Shown piece by piece: positions 802-31,730 of a DNA stretch of 64,000 bases (position 1 is its first letter; each line of letters starts with the position of its first letter). Origin of the DNA: Macrostomum lignano (lineage: Eukaryota); assembly GCA_002269645.1 (NCBI GenBank), contig NIVC01000083.1, forward strand, positions 1 through 64,000, written 5' to 3'. Position numbers and translations under genes: made by a program. The notes under the pieces are model-generated. The model saw only the letters and a list, made by a program, of their open reading frames with translations. It searched no databases and was not told where the DNA came from.

Positions 802-810
802 CCTGCTCAC

Positions 811-7399: not shown

Positions 7400-7598
7400 C
7401 CATAGGACTCTCAGGCCGCTGCGGCTGCTGCAGGGAGCTCGAATCGGACAGCAGAGGGCGTCGCCCGCCAGCTGGTGGACAACCGCGAAAACTGGCAGAC
7501 CGCCGCTGCTGCTGCCGTTGTTGCTGCAACTGCTGCGGCATTAAACTGTGTTGTTGCTGCTGCTGCAACAGTGGATTCCGACTGTTTCCAGACTGCAT
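7400..7598 (-). CDS. Probable first coding exon of the unidentified gene (MQSGNSRNPLLQQQQQ...RPESPM), polyQ-rich
   Basis: ATG at 7598, donor ATG G|GTGAGG at 7399; splices in frame to 7122. Confidence 0.65.
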
Positions 7599-7867
7599 GC
7601 CTTTCTTGTTTTTCAATAAGAAGTGTCAATTAATGAGTATTTTTATGTATATTTTTGCAGTCCATTGATACATTTTTACTAAGAAATTTTTATGCATAAA
7701 TTCCAGTTTCTGCTAGCCAATGCGGTTCTTCCAACACAGTAAGCCACGCGATTGGCTAAGGAAACTGAAGACTGAGGTTAATGTAGATTTTTTCTTCAAA
7801 AAACGCATCTAAAAACACTCAGACGGTGTAATCAAGAAATGTTGCGTCTTTGCGATGAACGACCGTA

Positions 7868-8495
7868 AGCTTGGGGTAGAGAATGGGGTGGGGTGGGTGA
7901 GCTTGGGGTAAAGATCGGGGTAGGGTGGGTGAGCTTGGAGTAGAGATGGGGATGGGGTGGGTGAGCTTGGAGTAGAGATGGGGATGGGGTGGGTGAGCTT
8001 GGAGTAAAGATCGGGGTAGGGTGGGTGAGCTTGGAGTAGAGATGGGGATGGGGTGGGTGAGCTTGGGGTAGAGATCGGAATGGGGTGGATGAGCTTGGGG
8101 TAGAGATCGGAATGGAGTGGATGAGCTTGGGGTAGAGATCGGAATGGGGTGGATGAGCTTGGGGTAGAGATCCGGAAGGGGTGGATGAACTTGGGGTAGA
8201 GATTGGAATGGGGTGGATGAACTTGGGGTAGAGATTGGAATGGGGTGGATGAGCTTGGGGTAGAGATTGGAATGGGGTGGATGAGCTTGGGGTAGAGATC
8301 GGAATGGGGTGGATGAACTTGGGGTAGAGATTGGAATGGGGTGGATGAACTTGGGGTAGAGATTGGAATGGGGTGGATGAGCTTGGGGTAGAGATTGGAA
8401 TGGGGTGGATGAGCTTGGGGTAGAGATCGGAATGGGGTGGATGAGCTTGGGGTAGAGATCGGAATGGGGTCGATGAGCTTGGGGTAGAGATTTGG
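7868..8495. repeat. G-rich minisatellite, ~32-bp unit GAGCTTGGGGTAGAGATCGGAATGGGGTGGAT
   Basis: Tandem units visible. Confidence 0.95.
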
Positions 8496-9069
8496 ATGGG
8501 GTCGATTATAAAAAAACTTAAACCAAGCAAAGTCATCTGATTTGGTAGCTTATTGTTACAAGAATGAAATAGGAAAAACCGTATTTATTGCACCTGTCCT
8601 TAATATATTGTGTAATAATATGGAGAATAAAATTCATGTGCTTGACAACGTAGACAAGACGGAATTAATAATGCATTTTTATGCAAAAAATCAAAGAGAA
8701 AAAGCTGTTAATTGTTACTTAGAGTAGCAATACTAGTGAATGTGCATTAACTTTGTATGAGCAATTCCGTGTGAGCAAAACTAAATATAAGCATGAAGTA
8801 ATAGTAATTAAAAACTACAGATGTTAAATAATCGATTTATTGTACAAAACTAAGCATTAAGTAATATCGATAAATACTGATTTTCTATTGAAAATTCGGA
8901 TAGCACAAAATTATAAGATTAAAAAGTAGAAAAAATTGAAACAAACATGCAAATTCACTGACAGATCAAGGTGCGTTTATAGAATGGATAAATCTATAAA
9001 TTGCAAAATGAATATAAGATATTATTGCAGCATTTGGTTGAGACAATAGAGTGAAATAGGAGTTTTTGG

Positions 9070-9405
9070 GTAGAAAATGGAGTGAGGTGGGTGTCTAGCG
9101 CTAGAAAATGGAGTGAGGTGGGTGTCTAGGGGCTAGAAAGTGGAGTGAGGTGGGTGTCTAGCGCTAGAAAATGGAGTGAGGTGGGTGTCTAGGGGCTAGA
9201 AAGTGGAGTGAGGTGGGTGTCTAGCGCTAGAAAATGGAGTGAGGTGGGTGTCTAGGGGCTAGAAAGTGGAGTGAGGTGGGTGTCTAGGGGCTAGAAAGTG
9301 GAGTGAGGTGGGTGTCTAGGGGCTAGAAGGTGGAGTGAGGTGGGTGTCTAGGGGCTAGAAAGTGGAGTGAGGTGGGTGTCTAGGGACAGGAAAATGGAGT
9401 GAGAT
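9070..9405. repeat. Minisatellite, 31/32-bp unit GGAGTGAGGTGGGTGTCTAGGGGCTAGAAAGT, just 3' of the PIGZ stop
   Basis: Tandem units; shares the GGAGTGAGGTGGGTG core with the arrays in PIGZ intron 2. Confidence 0.93.
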
Positions 9406-9451
9406 AGAAATTTCCCTACCTCCAGAGCTCTATGACAGAAGAACCAGCAAG

Positions 9452-10304
9452 TTAGGCGGTTAACACAAGATGAAACACCATAATGGACAGAGCCTCGGAC
9501 AGCGATCGTCCGGCTTCGACAACTGGCGAAGAAGACTCGGACAGGCGCGCCAACACTCTCCTGGCCGGGGGTAGGCTCTCAGCGGACAGGTGGCCGTACA
9601 CCCTGGCTGCGTACTTTAAACCGTAGCGAGATTTAGCGAATGCGGCTCTAACGGGATCGGCGTGAACTGCGGAGAACACGGCATAGACTGAGGCGACTCG
9701 ATCCGATCGAAGCTGGGCAGCCCGGGACTCCAGCGCAGTCCGGTTGCCCATGAGATCTTCGAGTTGTACACAGGTAGACTGCGGCAGTAGCAGGGTGTGC
9801 TGCGGCGGCGGATAAGTGCCTAGGAACAGCAACCGATGGCAGAGAGGCTCCTGCTGCGGCTGCAGTCGACTATTGGTCGAGCGAATCAGCTCGCCAACAT
9901 GAGCGGTCATGGGGAGGACGCCGCCCTGGTGCAGAAATCCCAAGCCAATCACGGCGATAGCGTTGAAAGCGATCCAGGGCAAGGCGAAGCTAAATATTGG
10001 CAGGCGACAGCGGAGTCGTTGAGCGACGCATACGGTTGCTAATGGCAACAGCGGGACTAGGAAGCGAAGCTCCTGATGCGGAAACAGTGATAGAGCGGCT
10101 AAAGGTACTAGACAGGCGAGAACAATAGCTTTACTGAGCTGCTGCTGCTGTTGCTGCTGCTGCTGAGCCGACTGTCGTAGAGTAGCCCAGGCGTGACGGA
10201 CGAATACTGGGGCAGCTGGGCCTAGCAACAAAGCCAGATTGATCAGGTGAAGCCAGCGAGGGTGTGTACCGTGTTGAGCCAGGTTCTCCGATTGAGAGTT
10301 GTAG
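9452..10304 (-). CDS. PIGZ: GPI mannosyltransferase 4 (PIGZ/SMP3), exon 3
   Basis: Acceptor tttttcctcAG|C; YNSQSENLAQHGTHPRWLHL, HQELRFLVPL, GFLHQGGVLP match PIG-Z motifs (NLARHGTH, HQEARFL, HQGG); TAA at 9454-9452. Confidence 0.92.
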
Positions 10305-10344
10305 CTGAGGAAAAAGAAATGGTGAGGTAAGGGTGGAAATAAAG

Positions 10345-10638
10345 CGAAGTGAGGTGGGTGCATAAGGGGGTAGTAAAGCGGAGTGAGGTGGGTGCATAAG
10401 GGGGTAGGAAAGCGGACTGAGGTGGGTGCATAAGGGGGTAGGAAAGCAGAGTGAAGTGGGTGCATAAGGGGGTAGGAAAGCGGACTGAAGTGGGTGCATA
10501 AGGGGTAGGAAAGCGGACTGAGGTGGCTGCATAAGGGGGTAGGAAAGCGGAGTGAGGTGGGTGCATAAGGGGGTAGGAAAGCAGGATGGGGTGGCTGCAT
10601 AAGGGGTAGGAAAGCGGAGTGAGGTGGGTGCATAAGGG
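10345..10638. repeat. Minisatellite, ~34-bp unit GAGGTGGGTGCATAAGGGGGTAGGAAAGCGGACT, left half
   Basis: Same unit resumes at 11433 after an inserted element. Confidence 0.93.
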
Positions 10639-11828: not shown

Positions 11829-12591
11829 CTAACAAAGTTCCAGGGTGTTACAACAGCCGATCGCGCAAAATCTGACAGGAAATCGAAAGCGCCATTCACG
11901 GTTAGAAATTCGTCCATACCCAACGAGGCGAATCTGCTAGCAAATGTCGGATTAAAAGTCAGCGTATCGTACAACACTAACGAGACAAATGCGGCGCTAA
12001 ATGCGGCCAGAATTGTGGCGCCAAAATTGAAACAGGCGCCAATAGGATCGACTAGCGAGCGGGCGCAACGCCAGGCTGTGTAGAGATAGGGCACAGCGGC
12101 GAAGGCGACAAAAGTTGGCCGATTCATAACCCCGATAGCGGTGACAATTCCGGCTGTTGATAGGAGCACCTTTACTAGTGTATGACGACTATTGCCAGGC
12201 GCGGAATAGGCATTGAAGGCAAACAGTAGGCAGATAAAAACAATAGCTAGAAGACTCGACTCAATGGCATTGCTCAGAGTTCTAGTACCGTGCACCATGA
12301 CTATGTACGATGAAGAGTAGAGGAACAGGCAGCGAAACGTGTCCAGACCGAGCTCTCTAGCCAGTAAAGCTACCATAGCGTCATTTGCTAGCGACAAAAC
12401 TGCTATAGACAGCCGGGTGACTATCACAACAAAGTAGGCGTCAACGTACCAAGAGAAACCGTCCACTAGCAGATGTTTAAATAATAGTAGCGGGCCGTGA
12501 TAGAACAGATGGAGTATGGCGGCGCTACGGATTGGACGATCAACGGTGAACTCCCAGGGTGGCGGGCTGGTTCGGACACCGAGGAGGTCGC
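11829..12591 (-). CDS. PIGZ: PIGZ exon 2
   Basis: Acceptor aatcgcAG|GC, donor GTT AG|GTAGAC; GDLLGV..PWEF...RS, TRTLSNAIES, NRPTF, VTPWNF match PIG-Z. Confidence 0.93.
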
Positions 12592-13170: not shown

Positions 13171-13209
13171 TGCGCTAGTGGGAGGGAAGAAAACAAATAT
13201 ATTTCTTAC

Positions 13210-13324
13210 CCGCAGAAATCTCAATTGACTGCATAAACTCATCCGGATGCAGATAGCCAGTTTGTGGCAAAAATATAAAAAAGAAACGAAACAGCAGCAA
13301 GGCTGTATACGGCTTTGAGTTCTC
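13210..13324 (-). CDS. PIGZ: PIGZ exon 1 (ENSKPYTALLLFRFFFIFLPQTGYLHPDEFMQSIEISA); no ATG ahead of the HPDEF motif
   Basis: Missed by the ORF track. PQTGYLHPDEF is the hallmark N-terminal PIG-Z motif. Donor GCG G|GTAAGA; acceptor tttaatttatttcAG|GAG in phase 0. The three exons total 1731 nt (576 aa plus stop). Confidence 0.9.
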
Positions 13325-13345
13325 CTGAAATAAATTAAAGTACAA
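13325..13345 (-). promoter_or_regulatory. U-rich acceptor (TTTAATTTATTTCAG) with no evident upstream cis donor exon; candidate trans-splice site
   Basis: Only ~415 nt separate it from the PTPMT1 stop, and no ATG-bearing exon with a usable donor was found in that gap by eye. Confidence 0.6.
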
Positions 13346-13739
13346 AATAATTACGTAGCAATTACAATGAATTACATTATCTGCTGCGAAACCTAAATTA
13401 AATGTAAGATATATATATATTTTAAAGGAATTGGTGAAGATTCTTCAGGGGAACGGGTGGAGATTCTTTAGAGGAATTGGTGGATATACTTCAGGGGAAT
13501 TTTTAGAGATCTTCAGGGGAATTGGTGGAGATTCTTCAAGGAAGTGAGGCGCGCCTACCCTACAAATTACTATTTTAGTAGTGTAAAGCATTTAAAACGG
13601 TAAAAAATTAAAGAAATTATTGAAAAACGACGAGACCAAAAATTTACAGACAACTTCATTATGGATTAATCTGTTAAATTAGGAAACTCAAATGCTAGCA
13701 AATATCTAGGGATTTTACAAGCGCAGTAAAAAATCGAAT

Positions 13740-14300
13740 TCATCTTTCTCTAGCCTGCTCTAATCTCCAGAATTCGTGCAGTGCATCCAGCTGAGGCCGA
13801 TTCAACAGTAAGCTGGGCCGTTTGGCGCGCAATCTATCGCACGCATCCACTGGCGCCAGGGACCGATGGCGCCGCATTAGATAAGCCGCGGCCACTGTGC
13901 CGCTTCGAGTCCTACCAGCTCTGCAGTGCAAGTACACGCTGCCGCCCTTAGCAACCGTTGATTCGATAAAATCGCAGCATTTCTGCAACTGTCTAGCGCT
14001 TGGCGAATGACCGCCAAAATCTGGTACAGATAGTTGCATCCGAGCTAGGCCCAGCCTGCGGCACTCTTTCTCCCCGGCAACCCAAGCCGGCTTAACCTCG
14101 TGCGGTTCGTTTATACTCAGTACAGCTTTGATGCTCTCAGATTTTGCTACAGACTGGAATTCTCTAACCAATGGCAGCGCGCCCAGCACGAGGTGCTCAT
14201 CGATACGGTTGTACCAGTCAGACAGGCCAAGCAGTCGCCACGTCAGCGACTTGGTGACAGCTGGGTAGAATAATAAGCGATGGATGGATGGCCAATCCAT
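13740..14300 (-). CDS. PTPMT1: Mitochondrial phosphatidylglycerophosphatase / PTP-family phosphatase, intronless, 186 aa
   Basis: RLLFYP, DWYNRID..LVLGALP, VYLHCRAGRTRS (CX5R) and QLDALHEF align with PTPMT1. Confidence 0.93.
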   Translation of the reverse strand: MDWPSIHRLLFYPAVTKSLTWRLLGLSDWYNRIDEHLVLGALPLVREFQSVAKSESIKAVLSINEPHEVKPAWVAGEKECRRLGLARMQLSVPDFGGHSPSARQLQKCCDFIESTVAKGGSVYLHCRAGRTRSGTVAAAYLMRRHRSLAPVDACDRLRAKRPSLLLNRPQLDALHEFWRLEQARER

Positions 14301-14341: not shown

Positions 14342-14942
14342 CGAGGGGTGTCCAAAAGTAGTGGGAATTTTCAACCTAACTCATAGTTGGATTCATATAG
14401 ATAGGAATGGCGCTGACGTTAATTGAAAGCGACTTTATGTATCTATAACATACTTTTTGAATACCAATCTAGTACCGTGATCAATCCACCGATGCTCCAC
14501 CAAGACAATTCACAACCACACACGGCTTCAAGGACAGTGGAGGCAATTCAAAGCATGAAGTTTGAACTTCTGCCTTACCCACCATACTTGTCTGACTTGG
14601 CTGGGAGAAGAACGTCAACTGCAACGGTGACAACGAACGTAAAGGTCTCCATCCCTAACGACAAGGATATTTGAGTGTGACTGACTATCGTGTTAAGAAC
14701 TTCAATAGATATGCTCTTACAGATCGATAGTCATGTTTTGTTGTTTTGTTGTTTTGGAATTTTGGAATTTGGGCACGGTACTAGATTGGACATAACTTCT
14801 GAATGCCGGTAGGTATTTACAAAATTCAAAAAGTATGTTATAGATAGATAAAGCCGCTTTCATTTAACCTCAGCGCTGTTAATCTATCTGAATCCAACAA
14901 TGAGTTATGTTGAAAATTCCCACTACTTTTGGACACCCCTTG
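14342..14942 (+). mobile_element. Internally deleted mariner element with long mirrored arms
   Basis: TIRs CGAGGGGTGTCCAAAAGTAGTGGGAATTTTCAAC / GTTGAAAATTCCCACTACTTTTGGACACCCCTTG, TA on the right (TT on the left), arms stay similar for ~140 bp, and the central remnant LHQDNSQPHTA...LLPYPPYLSDLA matches mariner HDNARPH / HPPYSPDLAP. Confidence 0.88.
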
Positions 14943-15325: not shown

Positions 15326-15607
15326 TCACTGCGAATCCCACCACTCCTTAAGCCAGCGGTCGTGATAAGGTCCCGCCCGCAGTACAGTCAACAGCAGTAC
15401 AGAGCCAGTCAGAGCAGCCTCTGGTCGTTTTAACACCTGGGCCAAGGTTAGGCGTTTATCAAGCGTCTCAGGTTTAGCCTTTGATGTTGCCGCTGAATCG
15501 GAGGTGCTGCTGCAGTCTAGGTAGAAGAGAGCACTGTCTGGATTGTAGGCTTTAGCTGAGTTCCAGGCTGCCGGTGGCTGACTAGGATCAAACACGGTTG
15601 CCGCCAC
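15326..15607 (-). CDS. TTC4: TTC4/Cns1 last exon (C-terminal wheel domain)
   Basis: Phase-0 acceptor ttctcaAG|GTG matches the phase-0 donor at 29055. VF..PAAW....YNPD...YLD and LTLAQVL resemble TTC4 MF..PSWD..KYCPD..VYFE and STLLQVL. Confidence 0.78.
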   Translation of the reverse strand: MAATVFDPSQPPAAWNSAKAYNPDSALFYLDCSSTSDSAATSKAKPETLDKRLTLAQVLKRPEAALTGSVLLLTVLRAGPYHDRWLKEWWDSQ

Positions 15608-16029
15608 CTTGAGAAGATTTAATTATGCGCTAATTGGAAACATTGAATTTAAAATGATAACCATCTCAACCCACATCTACGAGCGTACCAACCATCAACA
15701 TCTCTGTCCCCAAAAAAATATTCTTATCAAACTGCAGTAGAACAGCAGTATTTTACTTAGGTATTTTTTACTGTCTCGGAACCTAAGTAAAACAGCAGTG
15801 ACATACTGCATGTGCACATCGGCAAAACTTAATTACTGCGCATTTACTGGGAAAGCTCTTTAAGACAAGCTGAAGGCGTAGTGCCTCTTAATTCGAAGAC
15901 CAAAGCAAAAAGACAATTATGTGTAGCATAAGAACTAATTTTACTTCCACTAAGCGGTTGAATTAAATAAATGAAAATTGTTTTTATAAACAAATTTGAT
16001 TTTAAAAGCTTTGTTTTTGCAGTTTAACA

Positions 16030-16560
16030 TGTGTGGCAGGCGGGATGCCACTGTAAATTGAAACTCTAATTAACTGTTAATTTTGCAATTAGTCGTCCCC
16101 GCGCTGTCCGCTGAAGTTTCCCCTGTGTGGCTTGTTTTGGGTTTCCCAGACATCGCTCCACCGCATGTTCCACGCGTTGATAAATATTATCCTTTTGTGG
16201 AAGTTTGTTAAACTGCACTATTGTCCCGGGTTTTTTTTGTTACTGCCCATGCTGTGACCAGTGTGCCCACCGTGGCTTCCAGCAGCTGCTCCCACCCGCG
16301 GAACTGCTTGCTGTCTCTATTTAAACCCCCCCTTGTTTCATGTGCAATTTCATTCCCAGTTCCCCCGTTCCTCTACTTCCTTTACCTTTTCCTTTGCTGA
16401 TTCGTGCACCCAATTATTTACTTGCTTCGACTGTTAACCAAGTTTAATAAGTTCATTAATCAGAGAGTTTTCTATTATAATTTAGCACCCCGGTGCCGTC
16501 GCAATTCATCTCAGTCGTTTAATCAGCTATCCCAAACTGCTTGCGAATTAATAACTGACA
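16030..16560 (+). mobile_element. Possible solo LTR
   Basis: TG...ACA ends and a TATA-like CTATTTAAA near 16317; no convincing TSD. Confidence 0.3.
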
Positions 16561-19029
16561 TTAAATAATATCTAATAAATAAACTACATCCTACTTATTC
16601 GTTGATCCATAAGCAATAGCCTATCTTGAGTTCTTTGCCCACGGGGCGTAAAACAAACGAAGTTCTAAGCTCAAAGAAAGCTTCGAGACTTATTCGTTCC
16701 GTAATACGTAAATTACGGTGGTGGCAGCTCTACACTACTGAGAGTAATAAGCTCAGCAACTCGACGCATTAGTTTTCGGTATCAGAATCTCCGGCGTCTA
16801 CTATTTGAACGACCGTGCCGCTAACGACCGCTCCGCTACGATTACGACTACCCTCCCCCGGAACTTGAGGACAGTCGGAGTAAAACAGGAGAAAGAAATT
16901 CGTTGTGATTCGTCTGCGCGATTTTCTGGATTTATTCGTGCGAACGCAACGCCGGCGGGAATTCAATCGTGGAATCCACCCCACCTCACTGGTGACAGTA
17001 ACCGACCAATTTCCAAACAAAACTTTCTCCGCCCCCACCTCACATGAAAGTTTAATATTTAAGAACCGATATCATGGGCATGGCAGATTTGGCAGACATG
17101 AAAGACAGTCGATTAAAACTAATTTGTGATTTTATTATCTTCTGCAATCAATGTCCATCTTCTGCTGGATATTTTTGGCTATGCAGGACGTTGATACGAA
17201 ACAAATAAAACTGCAAGAATCGCAAAGAACAATAGGCCTAACATAGGCCTAGTGAATGAATTTAATTTAAAATACTTTACTGTTTTGTAACATGTTATAA
17301 CATCTGCAGCCTGTCGTAGCATATCACCACATGACCATTGCAATGGAATTAGCTTCTTGGTTTATCATATTGATATCTAACTGCTAGCTGGGTAGTTAGG
17401 CTAGGTTCGCTGGGTTGAAAGATATAGACAAATTGATGAATCAGTGGATCAAATTAGAAAGAAATTTGAGTAGGCATAGCCAAATTATGGCCAGGGACAA
17501 AAAGCTTTTATTGTAGAAATTATAGTATACCTTAGGCCTATAAATTAATAATATAAGTCTATATTATCTATAGAGTACTATGCATTTTAGAAGCTTAGTA
17601 TTGCAATTTATATTAATAACTATATATTGTTTTTTATGTATTATAAATAATTAATATTACTGTTTTAAGATAGGAAAAAAGTAGATAATTTGCTCCTGAA
17701 GTATGTAGTCTATGATTTGAAATATAGTAGAGCAATTCTCAAAATAATGATAAATTGTCACTTATCCTTTTTACTTTATTACTAGTCATTTTTTGTTTTT
17801 TTTAACCTTCCTTTGCACTAAGAGGTTTCACAATTAACCTAAATATTTTGGACCAACAAAAATAACATCTTTGTGTTTTGCAAAGAGCTGTTATATATAA
17901 TAAACTTTTGATTTAAAAGTGTTTTAGACTTATGTTAGCCCTAAATTTCATCATAATTAGTCAAAATATACTTTAGTTTTCTACACTATATACATTATAT
18001 ACTTTCTAAACCATATACTATTAGTATAAATATATATAGCTTTAATTATTCTACATTAGTCTAAGGCAAAACAGCTTTTAGCTATAATTTTATGAATATA
18101 TTCATTTTATATTAGGCAACAAAGGTGTTTGTTCAGTTCGTTAGTAATATAAGATATAATGGCAAAAACATTTATTACATTAAAAATTAGATAAAATAGT
18201 TTCTAGAAGATAAAAGTGCTAGTCTATCAAATAATGTTAGATTCTAAGTTGGCTTACCAAGCCTAAATGGGTAAAAAATCGATTCATTTATTGGCAGTTA
18301 AAAATCATGATTAGTCACTTTGAAATGAAATTGCAACTAGCTCTGCTATATATAGCGATATAGCTATTTAGCTATATAAAGTAGCAAAAACACAAATCAT
18401 AACAATTGCTAATACTTCTACAAGCCATATTGTACTCTCATTCTAGTTTAGAAATATGGAGTTGGCTTCCTGTAGTTGTGTATATATAAAGCCATTGTCT
18501 AAGAAAGATAGTATGTGTTGATACCTAATCATAACTAGTTTGACTAAAGTGTTACAGGGTTTTCTTCTGCAGGTTATTACTATTTCAATATAACTGATTA
18601 TTTAAATTACTTCCTAAGTATTACTAGTTTCCTCTCACTTCCTAGTAGCATTTGACAAAAAATGTCCCATAAAAGGGCCATTTTATCTATGGGTAACTTA
18701 CTAAATTCCCTCTAATTCTATCGTCTGCTTATTCTCTTTTGTGTACTTACCAAGTAGCATGTAGTAAATGTTAATTGGCAGTGTTAGGGTAGCTGTTTGG
18801 TAGTGGTTTCTGTGGCTTAAGTGGCTTACTTATCAAGGCTCTAGTTTATTATCCTGTCTTTCAGGACTAGAGGGTCATAGCAAATTCTTATCTATATTTC
18901 TATTCTAGAAAATCAAGCCCAATTTTGCTACTTGTAACAGTGGTAGATGCTCTACTAATTGAGCTAGCTAATCATAATTTTCAACATTGTATGGGAATCT
19001 AGCAATCATTCTCTAACCTTTCAGCAAAA

Positions 19030-21138: not shown

Positions 21139-21143
21139 GGAAA

Positions 21144-22509: not shown

Positions 22510-24743
22510 TGTGAAGCAGCGTATTCTCATAATACATTACATTAATAATCTAGACATATTGTCTACGCATTTCTGCACTTGCCCTCGCTATTGTAACAGC
22601 CCTATCAACTCCGTCTAATTTTCTGCTAGATATTTCGAAATTGTATCTAGGTGGAGGAGTGTGAGCTGTGATCTGGTAGCGTACTTTAGGGTGGGGATAG
22701 AGGTGACTTCCTCGCAATGCGGGTCGTACCTTGGCAGCGCTAATGTAGGTAGGCAAGACACTAGCTACGACTAATGGTGACGGGGGGGGGGGTATTTCTA
22801 CTGGCACGAGGGCTAAGGTTACCGATTTTAGTCACGCAGCCGTGGGGCGTATCAGGATGGATTGAAGTTGCCTGGTGAAAGCCCTGCTCTCTCTCTCTCT
22901 CTCTCTCTGTAGGAACGGGGATTAGCACGATTTCATAGGGAATTAGGAGACTTCAGGTGGATTCCTAAGCTTAAGGTGAGTTTCATGGGGCTTCAGGTGA
23001 GTTTCAGAGTAACTTCGGGTGGACTTCAGGTAGGGTTTACAGGGCGTTTGGGAGTTAAGGGAGGATTGTAGAAGCGAGTAAATTCGGGTGGCTAAGGCTG
23101 ATGGATGATTTCGCCGGGGAGTGGTGCAGGAATGTAAAGGGATTTGGCAGATCTTTCTAAACTGAGAAATAACAGAGCAACTCAGGTATTAATAGGTAGA
23201 TTGGACAAAACGTTCATTAAATCTGGTTAGGTAAAATGAGCCAAGAAAGGCTAGGCAAGGACATATTGCTGTCGGGGAAGGGAATGGTTGCTTTTCTCTC
23301 CACAAAGCTCTTTCTCTATAATAAAACATGGGGTGGGAGTCTGGCATGGTTGAATGATTCTGAGCGCGCGCAAGCGCAACGAACACCTAAAGTTGCGTGA
23401 ATGGATAACGATTGTAGAAAAAGCGTGTGGGAAGATTGTTCGCGCTAATTTGAATTCTAGTTTCATACTTTTTTTCAGAAGGAAACACTGCCTCACTATT
23501 TTATCGCATTTTCTTATTGGTGTTTTTACGAACAACAGTTTTAAACTTCACTTTAACTTCACTGTTCCACAAACAGGCAGGCAGGATATTGCTGCGGCTT
23601 TCGTTTCCAGTATTAGACAGGCTTGAAATTGAAATTCATGAAATGATCAATAATGTTTACAAAGGAAGCGTAGGTGAATAGACAATAAAAATTAACAAAG
23701 CTTAAAGTGCTGTTGAATTTAACATGAGGGTTTTTCGACCATATCTGACGCGGTCCGGAAAAAAACAAGGTAGACAAAGTAAAAATTGCATAGTACGTTT
23801 GTTTCTCAATAAAGTCAAATTTTTTCTCCTTGTTCATCAACCACCGCATCTTCCACTACTTGTGGATGGCGTTGAATACCCGGACGACTGCCTACTTGAC
23901 CTTGGAGTCGTTCTTGTAGGCAGTTTCTTCAAGTTCTTCATGTTGAGGAACAGCTAGAAGTCGTAGGGGGCAAGTCAGGACTGTAGGGTAGGTGGGGTAC
24001 CACCTCCACACTGAAGCTCCTTGGTTGGTCGCCTTTAAGGTATTGACCTGGGTATTCTCATGGCTAAGGCGAAAATTTTAGCTTCTTCTGTCAGCTATTT
24101 TGCTTACCTTTTTACACATTTTTCTCATTTCTAAGTACCATTTTCCAACGTTTTCCAATGCTGTTTAACATGTTCTGTTGTTCTGTGTTTGAGTTTGTCT
24201 CTGAGTTTGCCAAGCTAAATAAAGTTTAAAGTGTTAAAAGTTAAAGGAAAAACATTTTCATCTGCTATTTATCTATTATGTACTTACTTACATCACATGC
24301 CAATCTGCTCTTCGACTTAATTTACGCTAATTATTTGTGGTCTCACGCGTATGCGCAATTTGCAGTTTAGAATTCTGCAAGTTTACAGATCGTTTTGCGA
24401 AAAGCTACTGTACAATTTACAGTACTGTTCTGCTGGTATGTAAGCCATACAGAGTTCTGCCAGATTCCAAGCAGCGGCTGATTAAGACGAGCTGCCAGAG
24501 GTGGGTAAGGAAATCCAGTGAGCGCTTAATGCCCAGTAAACAGGCAGTTAAATACTGCAGTAAAATACTAAAATCAATGATAGCCGTAGAAGTGCAGTTT
24601 TACTGAAGTCGTCTTTGACTCGGATCACTGTCATGTTACACTGCAGAGACTATTCGACCAGAATAATTGATGTTGATTACCCCACGCTAACCCATGCACA
24701 AAAACCATGGATTAGCCGATGAAAACGGTACCTTAGCCAAGAA

Positions 24744-27700
24744 CAGTGTTGCCACTCTTGGCGTTTTTTAACACTGGCGTTTTTTGGCGTTTTGTGTTTT
24801 TATTTGCTGAATTCCTTTTTCTGGCGTTTTTTCAATGAATAATTATGACCCTAAAATTTTTACTGTATTTATTAGTAAAAAGACTAAAATAAACAGTAAT
24901 TTTAGCTCCATTCTTGAAAATATGACATTGTCTTATTGTTTCTCATCATTTATCTTTTTTCATACAATTTAAACACATTTATAACATTTTATTTTGTTTT
25001 TATTTTGCATTCCAGTGATTAACTGATTCACAAATAGCTCAGCAAAGACAAAAAGTGACTCTGCAGGCATGAGCACGAACATTGAGTCAACTGACTCTAA
25101 ACGCATTCGGCAGACCAACTTTGATCCTAGTTGGATTACCACTTTGAATGCCGAGAAATGGCTAACAAAGGGCAACTCTGACACTGACGGATATTGCAAT
25201 GTGTGCGATCGACCAATTTTTGTTGGAAGTGGAGGCATTGGTGCAATCAAGCAGCACATGAAAGCCAAAATTCACGAGTCGAATGCTGCTGCAGCACTTC
25301 AGCAGAAATCAATCTCAGCTTTCTTCACAAAGCATAGTGCTTCATCTGCTAATGATAACAAATCGGCGCAAAATACCTTAGCTGAAATTCGCTGGGTATG
25401 GAACTCTGCGTATAAGTCGAAAAGCTTCAACACTGAAGACGAAACGCCTGATTTATTTAGAGCCATGTTTCCAGACTCAAAAATTGCAGCAGGCTTTTCT
25501 TGTGGCCGCACCAAGCAAGCCTACTTGCTGACTTTTGCTATTGTCCCCTATGTAAAGCAGCAAATAACAGAGTCAATTGTGGGCGCAGAAGCCATGGAGG
25601 TGGAGTCATCATTTGGCTTCTATTCAATCAGTTATGATGAGAGTGATGGTCTCATGATGATTTGCGTGCGGTATTTGAACTCTGAGGGCAAAGTCGTGGT
25701 TGAAATGCTTGACCAACTTCCACTGGAACGTCTCGATGCTGCTTCATGTGCTCAGGCTATTCGCCAGTGTGTAATGGACAGCAAGCTGCCGTTGTCTAAG
25801 TGGATTGGCAATTTTTCAGATGGGTGTAGCGTAATGATTGGTGAACATGCCGGAGTTGGTGCCATCCTACGTGAAACTCCTGAGCTTGAGCATCTCATTG
25901 ATGTAGGAAGCTGCACTCTCCACACTGTTGCAAACGCATATCGCAAAGCTTGTGACAACCATCTTTCGGAAGTTTCCGATCTTGCCGACGACATTTTTGC
26001 TTGTTTCAGCAGAAGCATCACTCGCAGAAAAGAGTTTAAGGCTCTCCAACAAGAAATTGGCGTTGCACAACTTGCTTTCAAGCGGAATGTCGAGTTAAGA
26101 TGGCTAATTCTATTGCCCTGTTTGGCGCGAATAATCGAACAGTGGATTCCTCTGACAGCTTTTCTTTCGCAGTCCACAGACGATTCGAAGCGCATGCGAA
26201 GACTCCGATCTGCCTTTCAAGACCCAGACACCATAGTTTGCGTACGCTTTGCGATCCACGCCCTGAAGCTTGCTAGCCGCTTTGAGAGCGCATTTCAAGA
26301 AAGCTGCACAGTTCTTATTCATCGATCGCATGCTGAGCTGATCGCCCTTCTGGAGTCGATAGCTATTCAGTTTATGCAGCCATCTGCCTTCGAGAGAAAA
26401 TCTGTTGTCTCCGTTGACTTCAAAAACCAAAGCCTGCACTTGCCTATGTCTAGTATTGCCATTGGGCAGCAAAACAATCTGCAAGATCGGCAGAAGCCAC
26501 TCATTTATCGCTTTAAACAATTTTACATTGCGGTGGCAGCATACTTGCAGGAAAAGCTGCCCCTGAAGAAGAAAATTCTGCGAAGTATGAAGTTCCTTGA
26601 CTTCTCAAGGGAAATTGAGGAAGATTCTGTGACTTTTATCGCCAAAAAGCTTCCTCTGAGGTCAGGCTACTGAATCTGCGAACCAAAAGTGGTGAGCTCC
26701 TCTTGCCTGACAATCGTGACATCGCCTGCGGTTGGAGGAAGGCTGCAGATACAGGAAAGTACCCGCGTCTTTCTCGTCTTGCATCTGCGTGCTGTACTCT
26801 ATTTCACGGGAACGCAGATGCGGAGCGGTTTATTGGAAAGTCGCATGATGTTAGCGTTAATTCAAAGCGAAATCGGCTCTCGGACGAAAGACTTCGCGAC
26901 TCACTCTTGGCACGCAGCTTTCTGTGCGCTCGGAGCTTCAAGCCGAAAAATGTGCCAATTCCCGAGGAGCTCATCCAGGCCGCTTTAAAGGCAAGCTCAC
27001 AATACAAGCAGCATATGGCTGCCGAAAAGAAGGCAAATGAGCTGGCGGCTATTCGTAAATCAGCTGAGGCGGAACAGGAGAAAATGCGACTAGAAGCTGA
27101 AAAGGTAATAATTAAGTGAGCTAACTTCTAAGATTTGCAGTAATCCCTTTTATTTATTATTTCTCCCTACAAAACTACAGGATGCCGAACGAAAAACTGC
27201 ATTGGAGCGCCTTGCTGAAGAACAAAAAAACAGGTCGCTAAAAAGGCTGCAACAGCTGCAGAGTGCCTTGAGGCTGAAAGAGAAGTTCAGCTAGCGATTG
27301 AGAGGTTGCGCAAGGCGCAAGGAAAAGACCAGGACGTTGCTGTGCGCCTGACACAATTTGCATCGGATCGGCTGGTAATCGAACAGCGTGCCATGGACAA
27401 TGTCATCCAACGCACAGCCGAGGAAGCTGCCAGATTGAAACGACAGGCGGAGCATGCTTCGCTTGTTCGTCTCCCGAATGTTCCGAAAAAGAAAAAAATT
27501 GACTACTCACTACGCTCATACTATGACTGCTACACTATTGAACATTGAACATTGAAAAGGAGTTGTCATTCCAATTGTTATTCAGTCTCTTTACTGGTTA
27601 ATTATCACTTTGGTATTTTTAGGTGGGGTTGGTCTTCAACTGTTATCGTTGTTGTTAATCATTGGTGTTACAATATATTAGTAATATCTACGATGAAAAT

Positions 27701-27760
27701 GCCCTGTGTTATTTTTTTCTGTCAGCGTTTTTTTTGTCACAATGCTCAGTGGCAACACTG
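24744..27760 (+). mobile_element. hAT DNA transposon, 3017 bp
   Basis: 13-bp TIRs CAGTGTTGCCACT; perfect 8-bp TSD GCCAAGAA at 24736-24743 and 27761-27768. Confidence 0.96.
25069..27548 (+). pseudogene. hAT transposase with two lesions (frame break ~26665; probable missing A in the A-run at ~27222-27228), intron 27108-27180
   Basis: C2H2 finger YCNVC..GAIKQH..KIH, FPDS.IA..FSCGRTK, SISYDES, SDGCSVM, ELRWL, and the dimerisation motif YPRL...HGNADAER. Intron AAG|GTAATA...ctacAG|GAT; C-terminal coiled coil and PKKKK. Confidence 0.88.
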
Positions 27761-29055
27761 GCCAAGAAGCGTCTCACTCTGGCACTTGCGCCGCCCCAGA
27801 GTCGTTGCAGATGACACAGGTAAATTAGGAAAGAAGTGACTCTATTAGACGACTTTAAAACGATGAGAAGTCACGGTAAAAGTCGCCAAAAGTCGTCAAA
27901 AAGTCGCCTAACAGTGAATTTAAGGTGTTTTATTGCCTGGCGACTCTGAAACCACTCTGAGGCGGTGAAGTCGTATCTGAGGCGTGCCAGAGTAGCTACA
28001 GAGTCACTGGGTTGTGTTTGAAGCGCAGTTGATGAATCAGTCATATATCTAGCAAAAGTTAAGCGCTAGCACAACCATTCCTGGTCGTTCTTTCGGGACT
28101 CGTATATGATTTCTAGCTCGTAAAACTCACGTGACGCGCTCATGACAAAACTGTCGCATTAGACGCGTTGGAGTTGTTAAAAAGTTGCATGTACACATGT
28201 ACACTCTCTGTGCCCTCAAAAGAGGTACCTAGGCCAAGAAGCGTCCCAGAGTAGCTTTGAAGCGTTTTGTCTGCGACTCTGAAACGACTCTGGGGCGCCG
28301 CAAGTGATTCTGGCGCGACTCTAGTGACTCTGGGGCAACGGTGTAACGATTATGGGGCCGTAAGATCGTATTTGAGCGAGGCGTTCTAGAGTCGCATTAG
28401 AGCCACATTTCCGGCGTTTCAGCGGCGTTCTGCAGTCGCAAAAAGTCGCAGAAGGAGCGCTTTTGCGTCACTGTACAATTGTTAGTGCGTCACTTCTGAG
28501 GCGTTCTGGACGCGTTACAGAGTCCTTACTATCGGCCTTAAACAGACTGCTGGATCGACATTTCTGGGCGAATAGAAAATGCATGGTCATCGACTCAAAA
28601 GTGATGCACTAACGATTTTACAGTGACGCTAAAGCGCCTCTTCTGCGAACTTTTTGGCGACTTGTACTGGGACATCTCGTCGTTTTTAAGAGTCGTTTAG
28701 AATCACTTCTTTCTAATTTGACCTGTGTCATCTGCAACGCGTCTGAAACGACTCTATTGGACTTTTCATTGGGTAATGAACACTCAGTTTTAGCCTACTG
28801 AACTTTAATTGCACTCTAACTAGCCTACTAAGTTAGTAGAAAGTTAAACGCCAGCATCCTTGGACGGCTTTTTCGCGACTCTGGCCATTCTAAAACTCAT
28901 GTGACGCGATTGAGTTGTTAAAAAGTCACAAGAGTCGCCCGACTTACAAGAGTCACTAGTGAGCTGTTTGAAATGACTCTTAGCGACTCTTGTCACGGTA
29001 TCGTTTTCAACGGGCTGATGGGTGTAAACAAGACAATAGCCATCGAAACACGAAC

Positions 29056-29467
29056 CTCAGCCAGGCTAGCTGTCTCGTCAACTCCGCGCAGGAAATCAGT
29101 CTGGCCAAACTCAGGATACAGCAGCAGCACAGGATAGCGCAGCACGCCGTTGCCATCGGCGTCGCCAGCCGCGAACTCCACTTTGGCATCGTCGGGCATC
29201 TCCAGCCGCCCGGTGCCCGGCCGGATTTGGACGCCTCGGCGAGCGAGGGCGGCCGCCACGCCGGCAAGTTGGCGCTCGGCGCGCCTGCCAACGGCGGCTT
29301 CGCGGCGCGCTTTGGCGGCGCTGGCCTCGGCGACGGCGCGGGCCTGGCTGGAGAGGCGCAGAAGCTCCGGGTCGGCGACCCACCGGCTGAGGGCTTCGTC
29401 GCACCAGGCGGCGCAGTCGGCGTGGCGTTCCAACGACAGTAGGGCTCGGGCGCCGCGCTCGTGAGCT
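29056..29467 (-). CDS. TTC4: TTC4 exon (end of TPR, helix, start of wheel domain)
   Basis: Acceptor ctatccAG|A (phase 2, matches donor at 31183), donor GAG|GTTCGT. AHERGARALL..RHADCAAWCDEAL and LRYPVLLLYPEFGQTDF resemble TTC4 WPVLFLYPEYAQSDF. Confidence 0.9.
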
Positions 29468-29469
29468 CT

Positions 29470-31120
29470 GGATAGATGCGGGATGGATTGTTGATAGATG
29501 CGGGATGGATTGTTGATAGATGCGGGATGGATTGTTGATAGATGCGGGATAGATTGTTGATAGATGCGGGATACATTGTTGATATATGCGGGATAGATGG
29601 GGTATAGATTGTTGATAGATTATAGATATAGATTGTTGATAGATGGTCGATAGATTGTTGATAGATGCGGGATAGATTGTTGATAGATGCGGGATATATT
29701 GTTGATAGATGCGGGATGGATTGTTGATAGATGCGGGATGGATTGTTGATAGATGCGGGATAGATTGTTGATAGATGCGGGATGGATTGTTGATAGATGC
29801 GGGATGGATTGTTGATAGATGCGGGATGGATTGTTGATAGATGCGGGGTGGATTGTTGATAGATGCGGGATGGATTGTTGATAGATGCGGGATGGATTGT
29901 TGATAGATGCGGGATGGATTGTTGATAGATGCGGGATGGATTGTTGATAGATGCGGGATGGATTGTTGATAGATGCGGGATGGATTGTTGATAGATGCGG
30001 GATGGATTGTTGAAGATGCGGGATGGATTGTTGATAGATGCGGGGTGGATTGTTGAAGATGCGGGGTGGATTGTTAATAGATGCGGGATGGATTGTTGAT
30101 AGATGCGGGATGGATTGTTGATAGATGCGGGATGGATTGTTGATAGATGCGGGATAGATTGTTGATAGATGCGGGATGGATTGTTGATAGATGCGGGATG
30201 GATTGTTGATAGATGCGGGATGGATTGTTGATAGATGCGGGGTGGATTGTTGATAGATGCGGGATGGATTGTTGATAGATGCGGGATGGATTGTTGATAG
30301 ATGCGGGATGGATTGTTGATAGATGCGGGATGGATTGTTGATAGATGCGGGATGGATTGTTGATAGATGCGGGATAGATTGTTGATAGATGCGGGATACA
30401 TTGTTGATATATGCGGGATAGATGGGGTATAGATTGTTGATAGATTATAGATATAGATTGTTGATAGATGGTCGATAGATTGTTGATAGATGCGGGATGG
30501 ATTGTTGAAGATGCGGGATGGATTGTTGATAGATGCGGGGTGGATTGTTGAAGATGCGGGATGGATTGTTAATAGATGCGGGATGGATTGTTGATAGATG
30601 CGGGATGGATTGTTGATAGATGCGGGATGGATTGTTGATAGATGCGGGATGGATTGTTGATAGATGCGGGATGGATTGTTGATAGATGCGGGATGGATTG
30701 TTGATAGATGCGGGATGGATTGTTGATAGATTGTAGATATAGACTATTGATAGATGGTCGATAGATTGTTGATAGATGCGGGATAGATAGGGGATAGATT
30801 GTCGATAGATTATAGATATAGATTGTTGATAGATGGTCGATAGATTGTTAATAGATTCAGGATACATTGTTGATATATGAAGGATAGATTGTTGATAGAT
30901 GTGGGATACATTGTTGATATATGCGGGATAGATGGGGTATAGATTGTTGATAGATTATAGATATAGATTGTTAATGGATGGTCGATAGATTGTTGATAGA
31001 TGCGGGATGGATTGTTGATAGATGCGGGATGGATTGTTGATAGATTGTAGATATAGACTATTGATAGATGGTCGATAGATTGTTGATAGATGCGGGATAG
31101 ATTGTTGATAGATGCGGAAT
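29470..31120. repeat. Minisatellite, 22-bp unit GATTGTTGATAGATGCGGGATG, filling a TTC4 intron
   Basis: Tandem units run right up to the acceptor AG at 29469-29468. Confidence 0.96.
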
Positions 31121-31183
31121 AGATAGAGTGAACATATCATAGACTTAGCAGAACAGAACATAAATAGAAAATCAGTTTCTCAC

Positions 31184-31409
31184 CGGTAATGATCAGGCTT
31201 AAGCTGCTTCGCCTTGGCGCAATCTTTATAACAGCTACCATAATTCTTCAGATGGAAGTCGGCGGCAGCCCTGTTGGTGTACAAGACTGCCAACATTTCG
31301 GAATCTTTGCAGCCAGATTTCAGGCCTTCAGTGTAGTTCTCTTTGGCCGATTGAAATTCTCGACGCTTGAAATGATAATTGCCCTCCTCTTTGTAGCTGC
31401 GAGCGGATT
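31184..31409 (-). CDS. TTC4: TTC4 exon (TPR repeats)
   Basis: Branch-like CTGAC and acceptor cattgcAG|AA, donor TAC CG|GTGAGA; ARSYKEEGNYHFK...YTEGLK...LYTNRAAA.FHLKNYGSC.KDC. Confidence 0.93.
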
Positions 31410-31621
31410 CTGCAATGCGCAAGTTTATGTCAGCTTTGGTAAATTTGATGACCGTGGCAATTATTGACCCGTTTGTCAAATATTATGGCACCAACCAACC
31501 CCAAAAGCACAGTGTGTGCATAAACAATATGTGCTCTCTACCCCTTTGTCATTTTTCCTTTGTTCTGCCTTTCTTTCTCTGTTTTACTAGAAAACTACTA
31601 GAAAAAAAATAAAATTCTTAC

Positions 31622-31730
31622 CATCTGGATCCTCAGATTCAAATTTTAATGCTTGCAAAGCTTCAATATCAACAGGTAGAGGCTTTGAAGGATCAATCTC
31701 TTGGATGAAAGCGGCGGATTCTTCTAATGG
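31622..31730 (-). CDS. TTC4: Most 5' TTC4 exon found (PLEESAAFIQEIDPSKPLPVDIEALQALKFESEDPD), phase 0, no ATG
   Basis: Missed by the ORF track. Acceptor ctgatttttAG|CCA, donor GAT G|GTAAGA; EALQALKF matches TTC4/Cns1 EALKALAY / EGLQKLKY. Confidence 0.85.

What the first reader, a model, noticed from the sequence alone, without database searches (positions are those of the whole stretch)
7400..31730. Candidate four-gene trans-spliced operon: TTC4 > PTPMT1 > PIGZ > unidentified gene
Seen: four co-oriented genes. After subtracting visible insertions the gaps are ~0.4 kb (TTC4-PTPMT1), 415 nt (PTPMT1-PIGZ acceptor) and ~0.9 kb (PIGZ-next), with an AATAAA after TTC4 and AG acceptors just ahead of the downstream genes. 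Established: SL trans-splicing resolves polycistronic housekeeping clusters in nematodes and flatworms. Inference: one transcription unit that spans a 13.4 kb transposon-filled intron.
Basis: partly seen in the sequence, partly recalled or inferred. Interest (0 to 1): 0.72.

Follow-up and report, generated by a model that had tools for sequence, protein, structure and literature searches.

The report
Flatworm trans-spliced gene cluster, probable operon
This is an ordinary stretch of the flatworm Macrostomum lignano genome where a chaperone-helper gene (TTC4), a phosphatase gene (PTPMT1) and a sugar-transferase gene lie head to tail. They are probably read as one long RNA that is cut up by spliced-leader trans-splicing, a mechanism already described genome-wide for this animal.

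Summary
The window is Macrostomum lignano contig NIVC01000083.1, positions 1-64000. SL trans-splicing is documented for about 30% of this species' genes and operons are estimated for about 15%.

**What holds up**
- Three co-oriented minus-strand genes are real: TTC4, PTPMT1 and a GT22 mannosyltransferase (the "PIGZ" label is not verified).
- The gap sizes, the AATAAA after TTC4 and the 13.4 kb transposon-filled TTC4 intron are all confirmed.
- The first exons of TTC4 and the mannosyltransferase gene start right after an AG and have no usable ATG. The leader ends in AUG and would supply it in frame.
- Published tables flag this TTC4 copy TRANSSPLICED.
- In the public annotation, PTPMT1 and the mannosyltransferase share one transcriptional-unit name at both paralogous loci. 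This locus's PTPMT1 name was not shown.

**What does not**
- TTC4 carries a different unit name in all three copies.
- PTPMT1 has only a weak acceptor.
- The fourth gene is an unannotated orphan ORF with no evidence of trans-splicing.

**Verdict.** The PTPMT1→mannosyltransferase dicistron is likely (about 0.75). Including TTC4 is plausible (about 0.55). A four-gene operon is unlikely (about 0.15-0.2). This is a new member of a known kind and of low interest.

The parts
31622..31730 (-). TTC4 exon 1. It begins directly after TTTTTAG (AG at 31732-31731). It has no in-frame ATG, and TAG is the codon just upstream. The SL's AUG would be in frame, giving M-PLEESAAF...
   Evidence: Schistosoma TTC4 aligns up to 31712
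31184..31409 (-). TTC4 exon 2 (TPR repeats)
29056..29467 (-). TTC4 exon 3 (start of the Wheel domain)
15608..29055 (-). TTC4 intron 3, 13,448 nt
16070..28458 (.). 12.4 kb block of nested insertions inside intron 3. It is absent from paralogous locus L003 (empty site) and present in L001. Its long ORFs (19220-22352, and 25069-27119 with a weak hAT dimerisation match) lie on the + strand, antisense to TTC4.
15326..15607 (-). TTC4 last exon, ending in the stop codon
15195..15200 (-). AATAAA after TTC4. A poly(A) site near 15185 gives a 1170-nt mRNA when the 5' end is at 31730, which equals the published transcript length.
14342..14942 (.). 601-nt non-autonomous element with perfect 31-nt terminal inverted repeats. 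By eye it holds a mariner-like transposase remnant (Pfam gave no hit) on the + strand. It sits in the TTC4-PTPMT1 gap and is present in all three paralogous loci.
13740..14300 (-). PTPMT1-like dual-specificity phosphatase: intronless, 186 aa, with its own ATG at 14300 and an in-frame TGA two codons upstream. The only nearby AGs are at 14326 and 14320.
13325..13739 (-). 415-nt PTPMT1-mannosyltransferase spacer. It has no AATAAA or ATTAAA (nearest variant AATAAT at 13621-13616). It holds a 23-nt repeat carrying three CCAAT motifs and a TATATATA run. It ends in the only [T/C]TNCAG motif of the gap (TTTCAG, G at 13325).
13210..13324 (-). Mannosyltransferase ('PIGZ') exon 1. There is no in-frame ATG upstream back to the stop at 13447. 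The first genomic in-frame Met is residue 32, after the HPDE motif. The public CDS of both paralogues starts exactly at this acceptor.
11829..12591 (-). Mannosyltransferase exon 2
9452..10304 (-). Mannosyltransferase exon 3, ending in the stop codon
7599..9451 (-). 1853-nt spacer to gene 4. It holds minisatellites at 9071-9403 and 7868-8506, AATAAA starting at 8841 and at 8589, CCAAT at 7755, ATTGG at 7721, CATAAAAA at 7694 and 7647, and one [T/C]TNCAG (G at 7765).
7400..7598 (-). Putative gene 4 exon 1 (Gln-rich, with a GTGAGG donor)
6916..7122 (-). Putative gene 4 exon 2. Its phase matches exon 1. All three substitutions against paralogue L001 are synonymous third-position changes.
6275..6399 (-). 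Uncertain gene 4 last exon (candidate 6399-6302) with a conserved AATAAA at 6280-6275

Best explanation
This is a spliced-leader-resolved gene cluster of Macrostomum lignano.

**Proposed mechanism**
- RNA polymerase II starts in the AT-rich region upstream of TTC4, around 31.7-32.1 kb.
- It reads through TTC4, including its 13.4 kb intron loaded with antisense transposons.
- It then continues through PTPMT1 and the GT22 mannosyltransferase gene.
- The 35-nt leader (…TTGCAUG) is trans-spliced onto the TTC4 acceptor at 31730 and the mannosyltransferase acceptor at 13324. In both cases it supplies the initiator AUG.
- It is also spliced somewhere just upstream of the PTPMT1 ATG.
- Upstream cistrons are released by cleavage and polyadenylation (AATAAA at 15200 for TTC4).

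**How sure each step is**
- The secure core is PTPMT1→mannosyltransferase.
- The link to TTC4 is inferred from distance rules.
- The fourth, orphan gene more likely has its own start.

**Shown versus inferred**
- Shown here: gene identities, exon structures, gap sizes and the ATG-less first exons.
- Taken from public annotation: trans-splicing of TTC4, and one transcriptional unit for PTPMT1 plus the mannosyltransferase.
- Inferred: a single promoter.
For: - **Identity of the window.** It equals NIVC01000083.1:1-64000 of assembly Mlig_3_7.
[quoted passage not shown] The rule used is a repeat-adjusted distance under 1 kb to a trans-spliced downstream gene. The acceptor motif is [T/C]TNCAG and the leader ends in ATG (PMC8629364).
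- **TTC4.** This exact copy (Mlig020912.g3) is listed as TRANSSPLICED, 1170 nt long and neoblast-enriched (PMC5816591 supplement). The four exons total 1029 nt. Adding 141 nt of UTR places the 3' end 11 nt past the AATAAA, so the length fits a 5' end at 31730.
- **Need for the leader's AUG.** TTC4 exon 1 and mannosyltransferase exon 1 have no usable in-frame ATG. Adding the leader's AUG gives uninterrupted ORFs of 343 and 577 aa. An initiator AUG donated by the leader is established for flatworms (Cheng et al. 2006, as cited in PMC9851317).
- **Shared unit names.** PTPMT1 and the mannosyltransferase share unit names at both paralogous loci: Mlig016694 g2/g3 and Mlig024868 g1/g2. At this locus only the mannosyltransferase name (Mlig019743 g2) was shown. 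These names derive from RNA-seq-assembled units cut at SL and poly(A) signals (PMC5730564).
- **CDS start at the acceptor.** The public CDS of the mannosyltransferase begins exactly at the TTTCAG| acceptor in L001 and L003.
- **Distances.** All gaps are under 1 kb after subtracting repeats.
- **No poly(A) signal.** There is no canonical signal between PTPMT1 and the mannosyltransferase acceptor.
- **No intervening genes.** No CDS is annotated on the opposite strand between the genes.
Against: - TTC4 has a different transcriptional-unit name (Mlig020912) from PTPMT1 and the mannosyltransferase at all three loci. The authors do note that units break at repeats, and a repeat element lies in this gap.
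- PTPMT1 has no consensus acceptor. The only nearby AGs sit in an A-rich context.
- The public PTPMT1 CDS starts at an odd position with no AG in front.
- Both downstream gaps contain CCAAT clusters followed by TATA-like runs, which could be internal promoters.
- A shared assembled unit can also come from overlapping transcripts rather than true co-transcription.
- About 60% of trans-spliced genes in this species are not in operons.
- No RNA reads could be examined here (one search found no transcript contigs).
Confidence: 0.45

Rival explanations
1. Only PTPMT1 and the mannosyltransferase form a dicistronic unit. It is driven by a promoter in the roughly 0.9 kb between the TTC4 poly(A) site and PTPMT1, possibly within or beside the inserted element. 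TTC4 and gene 4 are separate transcription units.
For: - Unit names separate TTC4 from PTPMT1 and the mannosyltransferase in all three paralogous loci.
- TTC4 has a canonical AATAAA and a defined 3' end.
- Two-gene operons make up 75% of predicted operons in this species.
Against: - The repeat-adjusted distance from the TTC4 poly(A) site to PTPMT1 is only about 260 nt. That falls in the short-distance mode that defines operons.
- Assembled units are known to break at repeats.
Confidence: 0.3
2. One reading: one transcript from TTC4 through the orphan gene at 7598-6255.
For: - Gene 4 is co-oriented with the others.
- The repeat-adjusted gap is 881 nt from stop to ATG, and shorter from a poly(A) site.
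- One [T/C]TNCAG motif lies at 7765, and a CAG at 7593 would put the leader's AUG in frame.
Against: - Gene 4 is not annotated as a CDS at any of the three loci and has no homologue.
- Only about 24% of trans-spliced genes are non-conserved coding genes (PMC8629364). I estimate from those figures that about 20% of such genes are trans-spliced.
- The acceptor candidates are weak or would leave upstream ATGs.
- The gap lies near the 1 kb cut-off.
- Operons of four or more genes are about 7% of predicted operons.
Confidence: 0.17
3. There is no operon. Each gene has its own promoter and a short outron, and is trans-spliced (or not) on its own. The tight spacing only reflects a compact housekeeping region that was later inflated by repeats.
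For: - Most trans-spliced genes in this species are monocistronic.
- CCAAT and TATA-like motifs occur in the gaps before the mannosyltransferase gene and gene 4.
Against: - PTPMT1 and the mannosyltransferase share an RNA-seq unit at both paralogous loci.
- There is no poly(A) signal in the 415-nt gap.
- The motif evidence is weak. CCAAT occurs 2.5 times per kb, and in this gap it is part of a tandem repeat.
Confidence: 0.08

Closest known systems
Predicted SL trans-spliced operons of Macrostomum lignano (Ustyantsev & Berezikov 2021, PMC8629364; transcriptional units of Wudarski et al. 2017, PMC5730564)
   Same: - Same species and, as it turns out, the same assembly.
- The genes are co-oriented and conserved.
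- Repeat-adjusted spacers are under 1 kb.
- A TTTCAG acceptor matches the published motif.
- Repeats inflate the spacers, as those authors describe.
- The first gene is neoblast-enriched and trans-spliced.
   Different: - This locus is not individually described in any paper that could be searched.
- TTC4 is in a separate assembled unit.
- Spacers of about 260 to 415 nt are longer than the roughly 100-nt mode.
Caenorhabditis elegans operons (SL2-type)
   Same: A polycistronic pre-mRNA is resolved by 3' end formation coupled to trans-splicing of the downstream cistron. The cargo is housekeeping genes of unrelated function.
   Different: - M. lignano has a single leader and no specialised SL2.
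- The spacers here are longer and loaded with repeats.
- The leader donates the start codon, which does not happen in C. elegans.
Flatworm SL-donated initiator AUG (Schistosoma mansoni, Cheng et al. 2006, cited in PMC9851317)
   Same: The leader ends in AUG. TTC4 and the mannosyltransferase here have ATG-less first exons that are in frame with it.
   Different: Here this is shown only by sequence logic and annotation, not by translation assays.

Membership tests
SL trans-spliced operon (M. lignano criteria) | The organism uses SL trans-splicing to resolve polycistrons | tested here: met
   The window is 100% identical to M. lignano NIVC01000083.1. Literature.
SL trans-spliced operon (M. lignano criteria) | Adjacent genes on the same strand, not interrupted by opposite-strand genes | tested here: met
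   The gene models are all on the minus strand. The only + strand ORFs between them are transposon remnants.
SL trans-spliced operon (M. lignano criteria) | Repeat-adjusted intergenic distance under 1 kb | tested here: met
   Measured stop to start: 424, 415 and 881 nt. Measured from the TTC4 poly(A) site: about 260 nt.
SL trans-spliced operon (M. lignano criteria) | The downstream gene is SL trans-spliced (mannosyltransferase) | tested here: met
   This is indirect. The exon has no ATG and follows a TTTCAG| acceptor. The public CDS starts at that acceptor in two paralogues. No reads were seen.
SL trans-spliced operon (M. lignano criteria) | The downstream gene is SL trans-spliced (PTPMT1) | tested here: inconclusive
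   The public 5'-partial CDS implies a sharp transcript boundary at 14297 in all three copies. There is no AG there, and the nearest AG (14320) has a poor context.
SL trans-spliced operon (M. lignano criteria) | The downstream gene is SL trans-spliced (gene 4) | not testable with these tools
   There is no annotation, no transcript contigs and no homologues.
SL trans-spliced operon (M. lignano criteria) | One pre-mRNA covers the genes | tested here: inconclusive
   PTPMT1 and the mannosyltransferase share unit names at both paralogous loci. This locus's PTPMT1 name was not shown. TTC4 has a different name at all three. Unit assembly is known to break at repeats.
SL trans-spliced operon (M. lignano criteria) | No independent promoter in the spacers | not testable with these tools
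   Motif counts (CCAAT, TATA-like) do not discriminate between the spacers.
TTC4 / Cns1 co-chaperone | TPR repeats plus a C-terminal Wheel domain | tested here: met
   Pfam Wheel at 1.1e-10 plus TPR_1 and TPR_2. Cns1 6HFT at 1e-26 over the full length. The published annotation is TTC4.
PTPMT1 | A DSP-fold phosphatase closest to PTPMT1 | tested here: met
   PDB 3RGO PTPMT1 at 2.5e-22, eight orders of magnitude better than the next family. Pfam DSPc.
PIGZ (GPI mannosyltransferase IV) within GT22 | Membership of GT22 | tested here: met
   Glyco_transf_22 at 1.2e-51, covering profile positions 3-384 of 414.
PIGZ (GPI mannosyltransferase IV) within GT22 | Orthology to PIGZ rather than to PIGB, ALG9 or ALG12 | not tested
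   No named reference set was available. There is no PDB relative. UniRef calls it only 'Mannosyltransferase'.

The most novel reading that the evidence does not exclude
Some of the strings at the 5' ends of the downstream genes may be relics of cDNA copies of leader-bearing mRNAs. These strings resemble the leader's 3' end. On this reading, the intronless PTPMT1 would be a retrocopy that landed between TTC4 and the mannosyltransferase gene and was captured into the operon. That would be operon growth by recycling of trans-spliced mRNA, as described for dinoflagellates but not for flatworm operons.
Probability: 0.07. Interest if true: 0.55.

Novelty: new member of a known kind. Interest (0 to 1): 0.2.

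Why it matters
It adds little on its own, for three reasons:
- Operons resolved by the spliced leader are already catalogued genome-wide in this species.
- The public annotation already joins PTPMT1 and the mannosyltransferase.
- The public annotation already flags TTC4 as trans-spliced.

The locus is still a tidy worked example of two things:
- Two genes depend on the leader for their start codon.
- A likely polycistronic unit tolerates a 12.4 kb transposon insertion that one paralogous copy lacks. This could serve as a natural comparison of transcription through filled and empty introns.

Tried and rejected
- **Transcript contigs for PTPMT1.** An exact look-up found none, so no SL-bearing RNA could be read.
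- **The four unit names in the literature.** Full-text and supplement searches found only TTC4. The PTPMT1 and mannosyltransferase entries were not in the stored (truncated) table.
- **Identifying gene 4.** Pfam, a word-indexed search of 5.8 billion proteins and a full HMMER search of 1.84 billion representatives gave nothing. The only hit was one low-complexity match at E = 7e-4.
- **An SL RNA gene in the window.** None was found.
- **A cis-spliced first exon for the mannosyltransferase.** Four ATG…GT candidates exist in the gap (for example ATGAAGTTGTCT|GTAAAT at 13659-13648). None has the GT[G/A]AG donor consensus, and the public models start at the acceptor. I judged them unlikely, but they are not excluded.
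- **Promoter motifs as a discriminator.** I first read CCAAT plus TATA-like motifs upstream of gene 4 as a sign of its own promoter. The PTPMT1-mannosyltransferase gap has similar motifs inside a tandem repeat, so I dropped this as evidence.
- **The 38-nt duplication flanking the inserted element.** I considered it as a target-site duplication. It is better explained as a pre-existing two-copy tandem repeat with the insertion at a TA.
- **PTPMT1 as a retrocopy.** The full-length leader alignment is only in the top 1% of window positions, and there is no poly(A) relic. The support is weak.

Full report
**Where the window comes from**

The PTPMT1-like ORF is 98-100% identical to Macrostomum lignano proteins. 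A 20.6 kb locus fetched from assembly GCA_002269645.1 (Mlig_3_7), contig NIVC01000083.1 positions 3740-24297, is 100% identical to window 3740-24297. The window is therefore the first 64 kb of that contig.

Two further copies of the locus exist in the same assembly: L001 (NIVC01000827.1) and L003 (NIVC01000082.1). They are 92-99% identical to the window and collinear with it. The sequenced line is known to carry duplicated chromosome material.

**The observation**

All four features lie on the minus strand. Brute-force joining of GT..AG sites reproduces the annotated proteins exactly.

| Gene | Exons (minus strand) | Support |
|---|---|---|
| TTC4 | (31730)31691-31622, 31409-31184, 29467-29056, 15607-15326 | TPR + Cns1/TTC4 Wheel domains; Cns1 6HFT 1e-26; published as TTC4 |
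| PTPMT1 | 14300-13740, single exon | PDB PTPMT1 3RGO 2.5e-22 |
| GT22 mannosyltransferase | 13324-13210, 12591-11829, 10304-9452 | Glyco_transf_22 1e-51 |

- I could not verify that the GT22 protein is PIGZ rather than another family member.
- TTC4 intron 3 is 13,448 nt.
- Of that intron, 16070-28458 (12.4 kb) is missing from L003, whose intron is about 1 kb.
- The long ORFs in this block lie on the + strand, antisense to TTC4. One has a weak hAT dimerisation match.

| Gap | Raw length | Repeats subtracted | Remainder |
|---|---|---|---|
| TTC4 stop to PTPMT1 ATG | 1025 nt | 601-nt element with perfect 31-nt inverted ends | 424 nt |
| PTPMT1 stop to mannosyltransferase acceptor | 415 nt | none | 415 nt |
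| Mannosyltransferase stop to gene 4 ATG | 1853 nt | 333 + 639 nt minisatellites | 881 nt |

AATAAA after TTC4 lies at 15200-15195.

**The fourth gene**

The ORF from ATG 7598 ends at a GTGAGG donor at 7400. Its phase matches a second exon at 7122-6916.

- Against L001, the only differences in exon 1 are in-frame CAG-repeat indels.
- All three substitutions in exon 2 are synonymous third-position changes. This suggests a real coding gene.
- A conserved AATAAA lies at 6280-6275, but the last exon is uncertain.
- The gene has no Pfam domain and no homologue in 5.8 billion or 1.84 billion-representative protein sets.
- No CDS is annotated there at any of the three loci.

**Evidence for trans-splicing**

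Background from the literature:
- The M. lignano leader is CGGTCTCTTACTGCGAAGACTCAATTTATTGCATG.
- The enriched acceptor motif is [T/C]TNCAG.
- About 30% of genes are trans-spliced and about 15% are assigned to operons.

*TTC4*
- Exon 1 starts after TTTTTAG.
- The in-frame codon just upstream is TAG, and there is no in-frame ATG until residue 76.
- Adding the leader's AUG gives a clean 343-aa ORF.
- The published table lists this very copy (Mlig020912.g3) as TRANSSPLICED, 1170 nt and stringently neoblast-enriched.
- The exon sum from 31730 is 1029 nt. Adding 141 nt of UTR ends the mRNA 11 nt past the AATAAA, so the numbers fit.

*Mannosyltransferase*
- Exon 1 starts after TTTCAG, the only consensus motif in the 415-nt gap.
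- There is no in-frame ATG back to the stop at 13447. The first genomic Met lies after the HPDE motif.
- The public CDS in L001 and L003 begins exactly at this acceptor.
- An initiator AUG donated by the leader is established in flatworms (PMC9851317, citing Cheng et al. 2006).

*PTPMT1*
- It has its own ATG, with TGA two codons upstream.
- The only AGs nearby (14326, 14320) sit in an A-rich context.
- Its public CDS is 5'-partial and starts at the codon after the ATG in all three copies, including L001 where the ATG has become CTG.
- This implies a sharp annotated boundary at 14297 with no AG in front. I cannot explain it.

**Evidence for co-transcription**

Locus names in the public annotation derive from RNA-seq-assembled transcriptional units that were cut into genes at SL and poly(A) peaks (PMC5730564). 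The names at the three loci are:

| Locus | TTC4 | PTPMT1 | Mannosyltransferase |
|---|---|---|---|
| L001 | Mlig020912 g2 | Mlig016694 g2 | Mlig016694 g3 |
| L003 | Mlig020912 g1 | Mlig024868 g1 | Mlig024868 g2 |
| This window | Mlig020912 g3 | name not shown | Mlig019743 g2 |

- Two unrelated genes can share a prefix only if they came from one assembled unit. PTPMT1 and the mannosyltransferase do so at both paralogous loci.
- TTC4 carries a different prefix at all three loci.
- The authors note that units tend to break at repeats inside operons, and a 601-nt repeat element sits in this gap in all three copies.
- The separation therefore weakens the TTC4 link but does not refute it.
- The repeat-adjusted distance from the inferred TTC4 poly(A) site to PTPMT1 is about 260 nt.
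- There is no AATAAA or ATTAAA between PTPMT1 and the next acceptor. This is compatible with coupled 3' end formation and trans-splicing.

**Against**

- Promoter-like motifs occur before gene 4: CCAAT at 7755, ATTGG at 7721 and CATAAAAA at 7694 and 7647.
- Similar motifs occur in the PTPMT1-mannosyltransferase gap, where three CCAAT lie inside a 23-nt tandem repeat followed by TATATATA. The background rate is 2.5 per kb, so these motifs do not discriminate.
- Internal promoters cannot be excluded in any gap.
- No RNA reads were accessible.

**Probabilities**

| Claim | Probability |
|---|---|
| PTPMT1→mannosyltransferase co-transcribed | about 0.75 |
| TTC4 in the same unit | about 0.55 |
| Gene 4 included as well (full four-gene operon) | about 0.15-0.2 |

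For gene 4, only about 24% of trans-spliced genes are non-conserved coding genes. From those figures I estimate that about 20% of such genes are trans-spliced.

**Comparison with what is known, and novelty**

The locus behaves like the predicted operons of this species and, more loosely, like C. elegans operons. The flatworm-specific twist is that the leader donates the start codon. It meets the published distance and orientation criteria. The requirement that the downstream gene be trans-spliced is met indirectly for the mannosyltransferase. It is inconclusive for PTPMT1 and untestable for gene 4.

This is a new member of a known kind, largely captured already by the public annotation, and of low interest.

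**An unexplained side observation**

Strings close to the leader's last 13 nt end at or near the 5' ends of all three downstream genes:

| Site | String | Edit distance to leader 3' end | How rare in the window |
|---|---|---|---|
| Mannosyltransferase acceptor (ends exactly there) | AATTTATTTCAG\| | 2 | only 9 of 128,000 end positions are this close |
| PTPMT1 ATG (ends exactly there) | TGATTGATTCATG\| | 3 | 0.16% of positions |
| 95 nt upstream of gene 4's ATG | AATTTATGCATA | 2 | same threshold as the first row |

This may be chance plus acceptor composition. It may instead be a source of artefacts in SL-read trimming, or a relic of cDNA-mediated events. I give the last reading under 10%.

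Noticed in passing
13325-13337, 14298-14310 and 7691-7703 (minus strand): Strings within 2-3 edits of the leader's last 13 nt (AATTTATTGCATG) occur at three places. One ends exactly at the mannosyltransferase acceptor. One ends exactly at the PTPMT1 ATG. One lies 95 nt upstream of gene 4's ATG. Only 9 of 128,000 end positions in the window are within 2 edits. This could be chance, a cause of SL-read trimming artefacts in the public annotation, or relics of SL-bearing cDNA.
   Followed up: partly
L001:9998-10000 versus window 14300-14298: In paralogous copy L001 the PTPMT1 start codon is CTG instead of ATG, while the ORF stays intact. Against the window there are 4 non-synonymous and 2 synonymous codon differences. 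In all three copies the public CDS is 5'-partial and starts at the following GAT codon, where there is no AG acceptor.
   Followed up: partly
window 16070-28458; L003:8285-8289: A 12.4 kb block of nested insertions in TTC4 intron 3 is present in the window and in L001 but absent from L003 (a clean empty site). Its long ORFs are all antisense to TTC4. One (25069-27119) has a weak hAT dimerisation match, and another (19220-20736) is broken by frameshifts.
   Followed up: partly
window 14943-15000 and 14301-14341: A roughly 38-nt sequence (GTTAACAAAGACACAGTCACC(A)TGACTGATTGAT) flanks both sides of the 601-nt inverted-repeat element. It looks like a pre-existing two-copy tandem repeat that was split by insertion at a TA, not a target-site duplication.
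   Followed up: partly
window 1-6900, 7868-8506, 9071-9403, 10341-10643, 11443-11767, 12683-13188, 29471-31124: Dense minisatellite arrays (periods 14-44 nt, up to 1.65 kb) fill the introns of TTC4 and the mannosyltransferase gene, the spacers, and most of the first 6 kb of the contig. Their purine-rich strand is the + strand throughout the locus.
   Followed up: no
window 45466-46208 (+), 61813-62412 (+), 36974-37426 (+): There are other coding pieces in the window. One is a metallo-beta-lactamase-fold gene split over at least two exons. Another is the C-terminal part of an amiloride-sensitive sodium channel (ASC/DEG-ENaC) gene. A third is a PHD-finger ORF that may belong to a mobile element.
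   Followed up: no
window 13306 and 31691: On this contig the public CDS starts of the mannosyltransferase and TTC4 lie 18 and 39 nt downstream of the acceptors. In L001 and L003 the mannosyltransferase CDS starts exactly at the acceptor. In L001 the TTC4 model starts at exon 2. The 5' ends in the public annotation are therefore inconsistent between copies.
   Followed up: no
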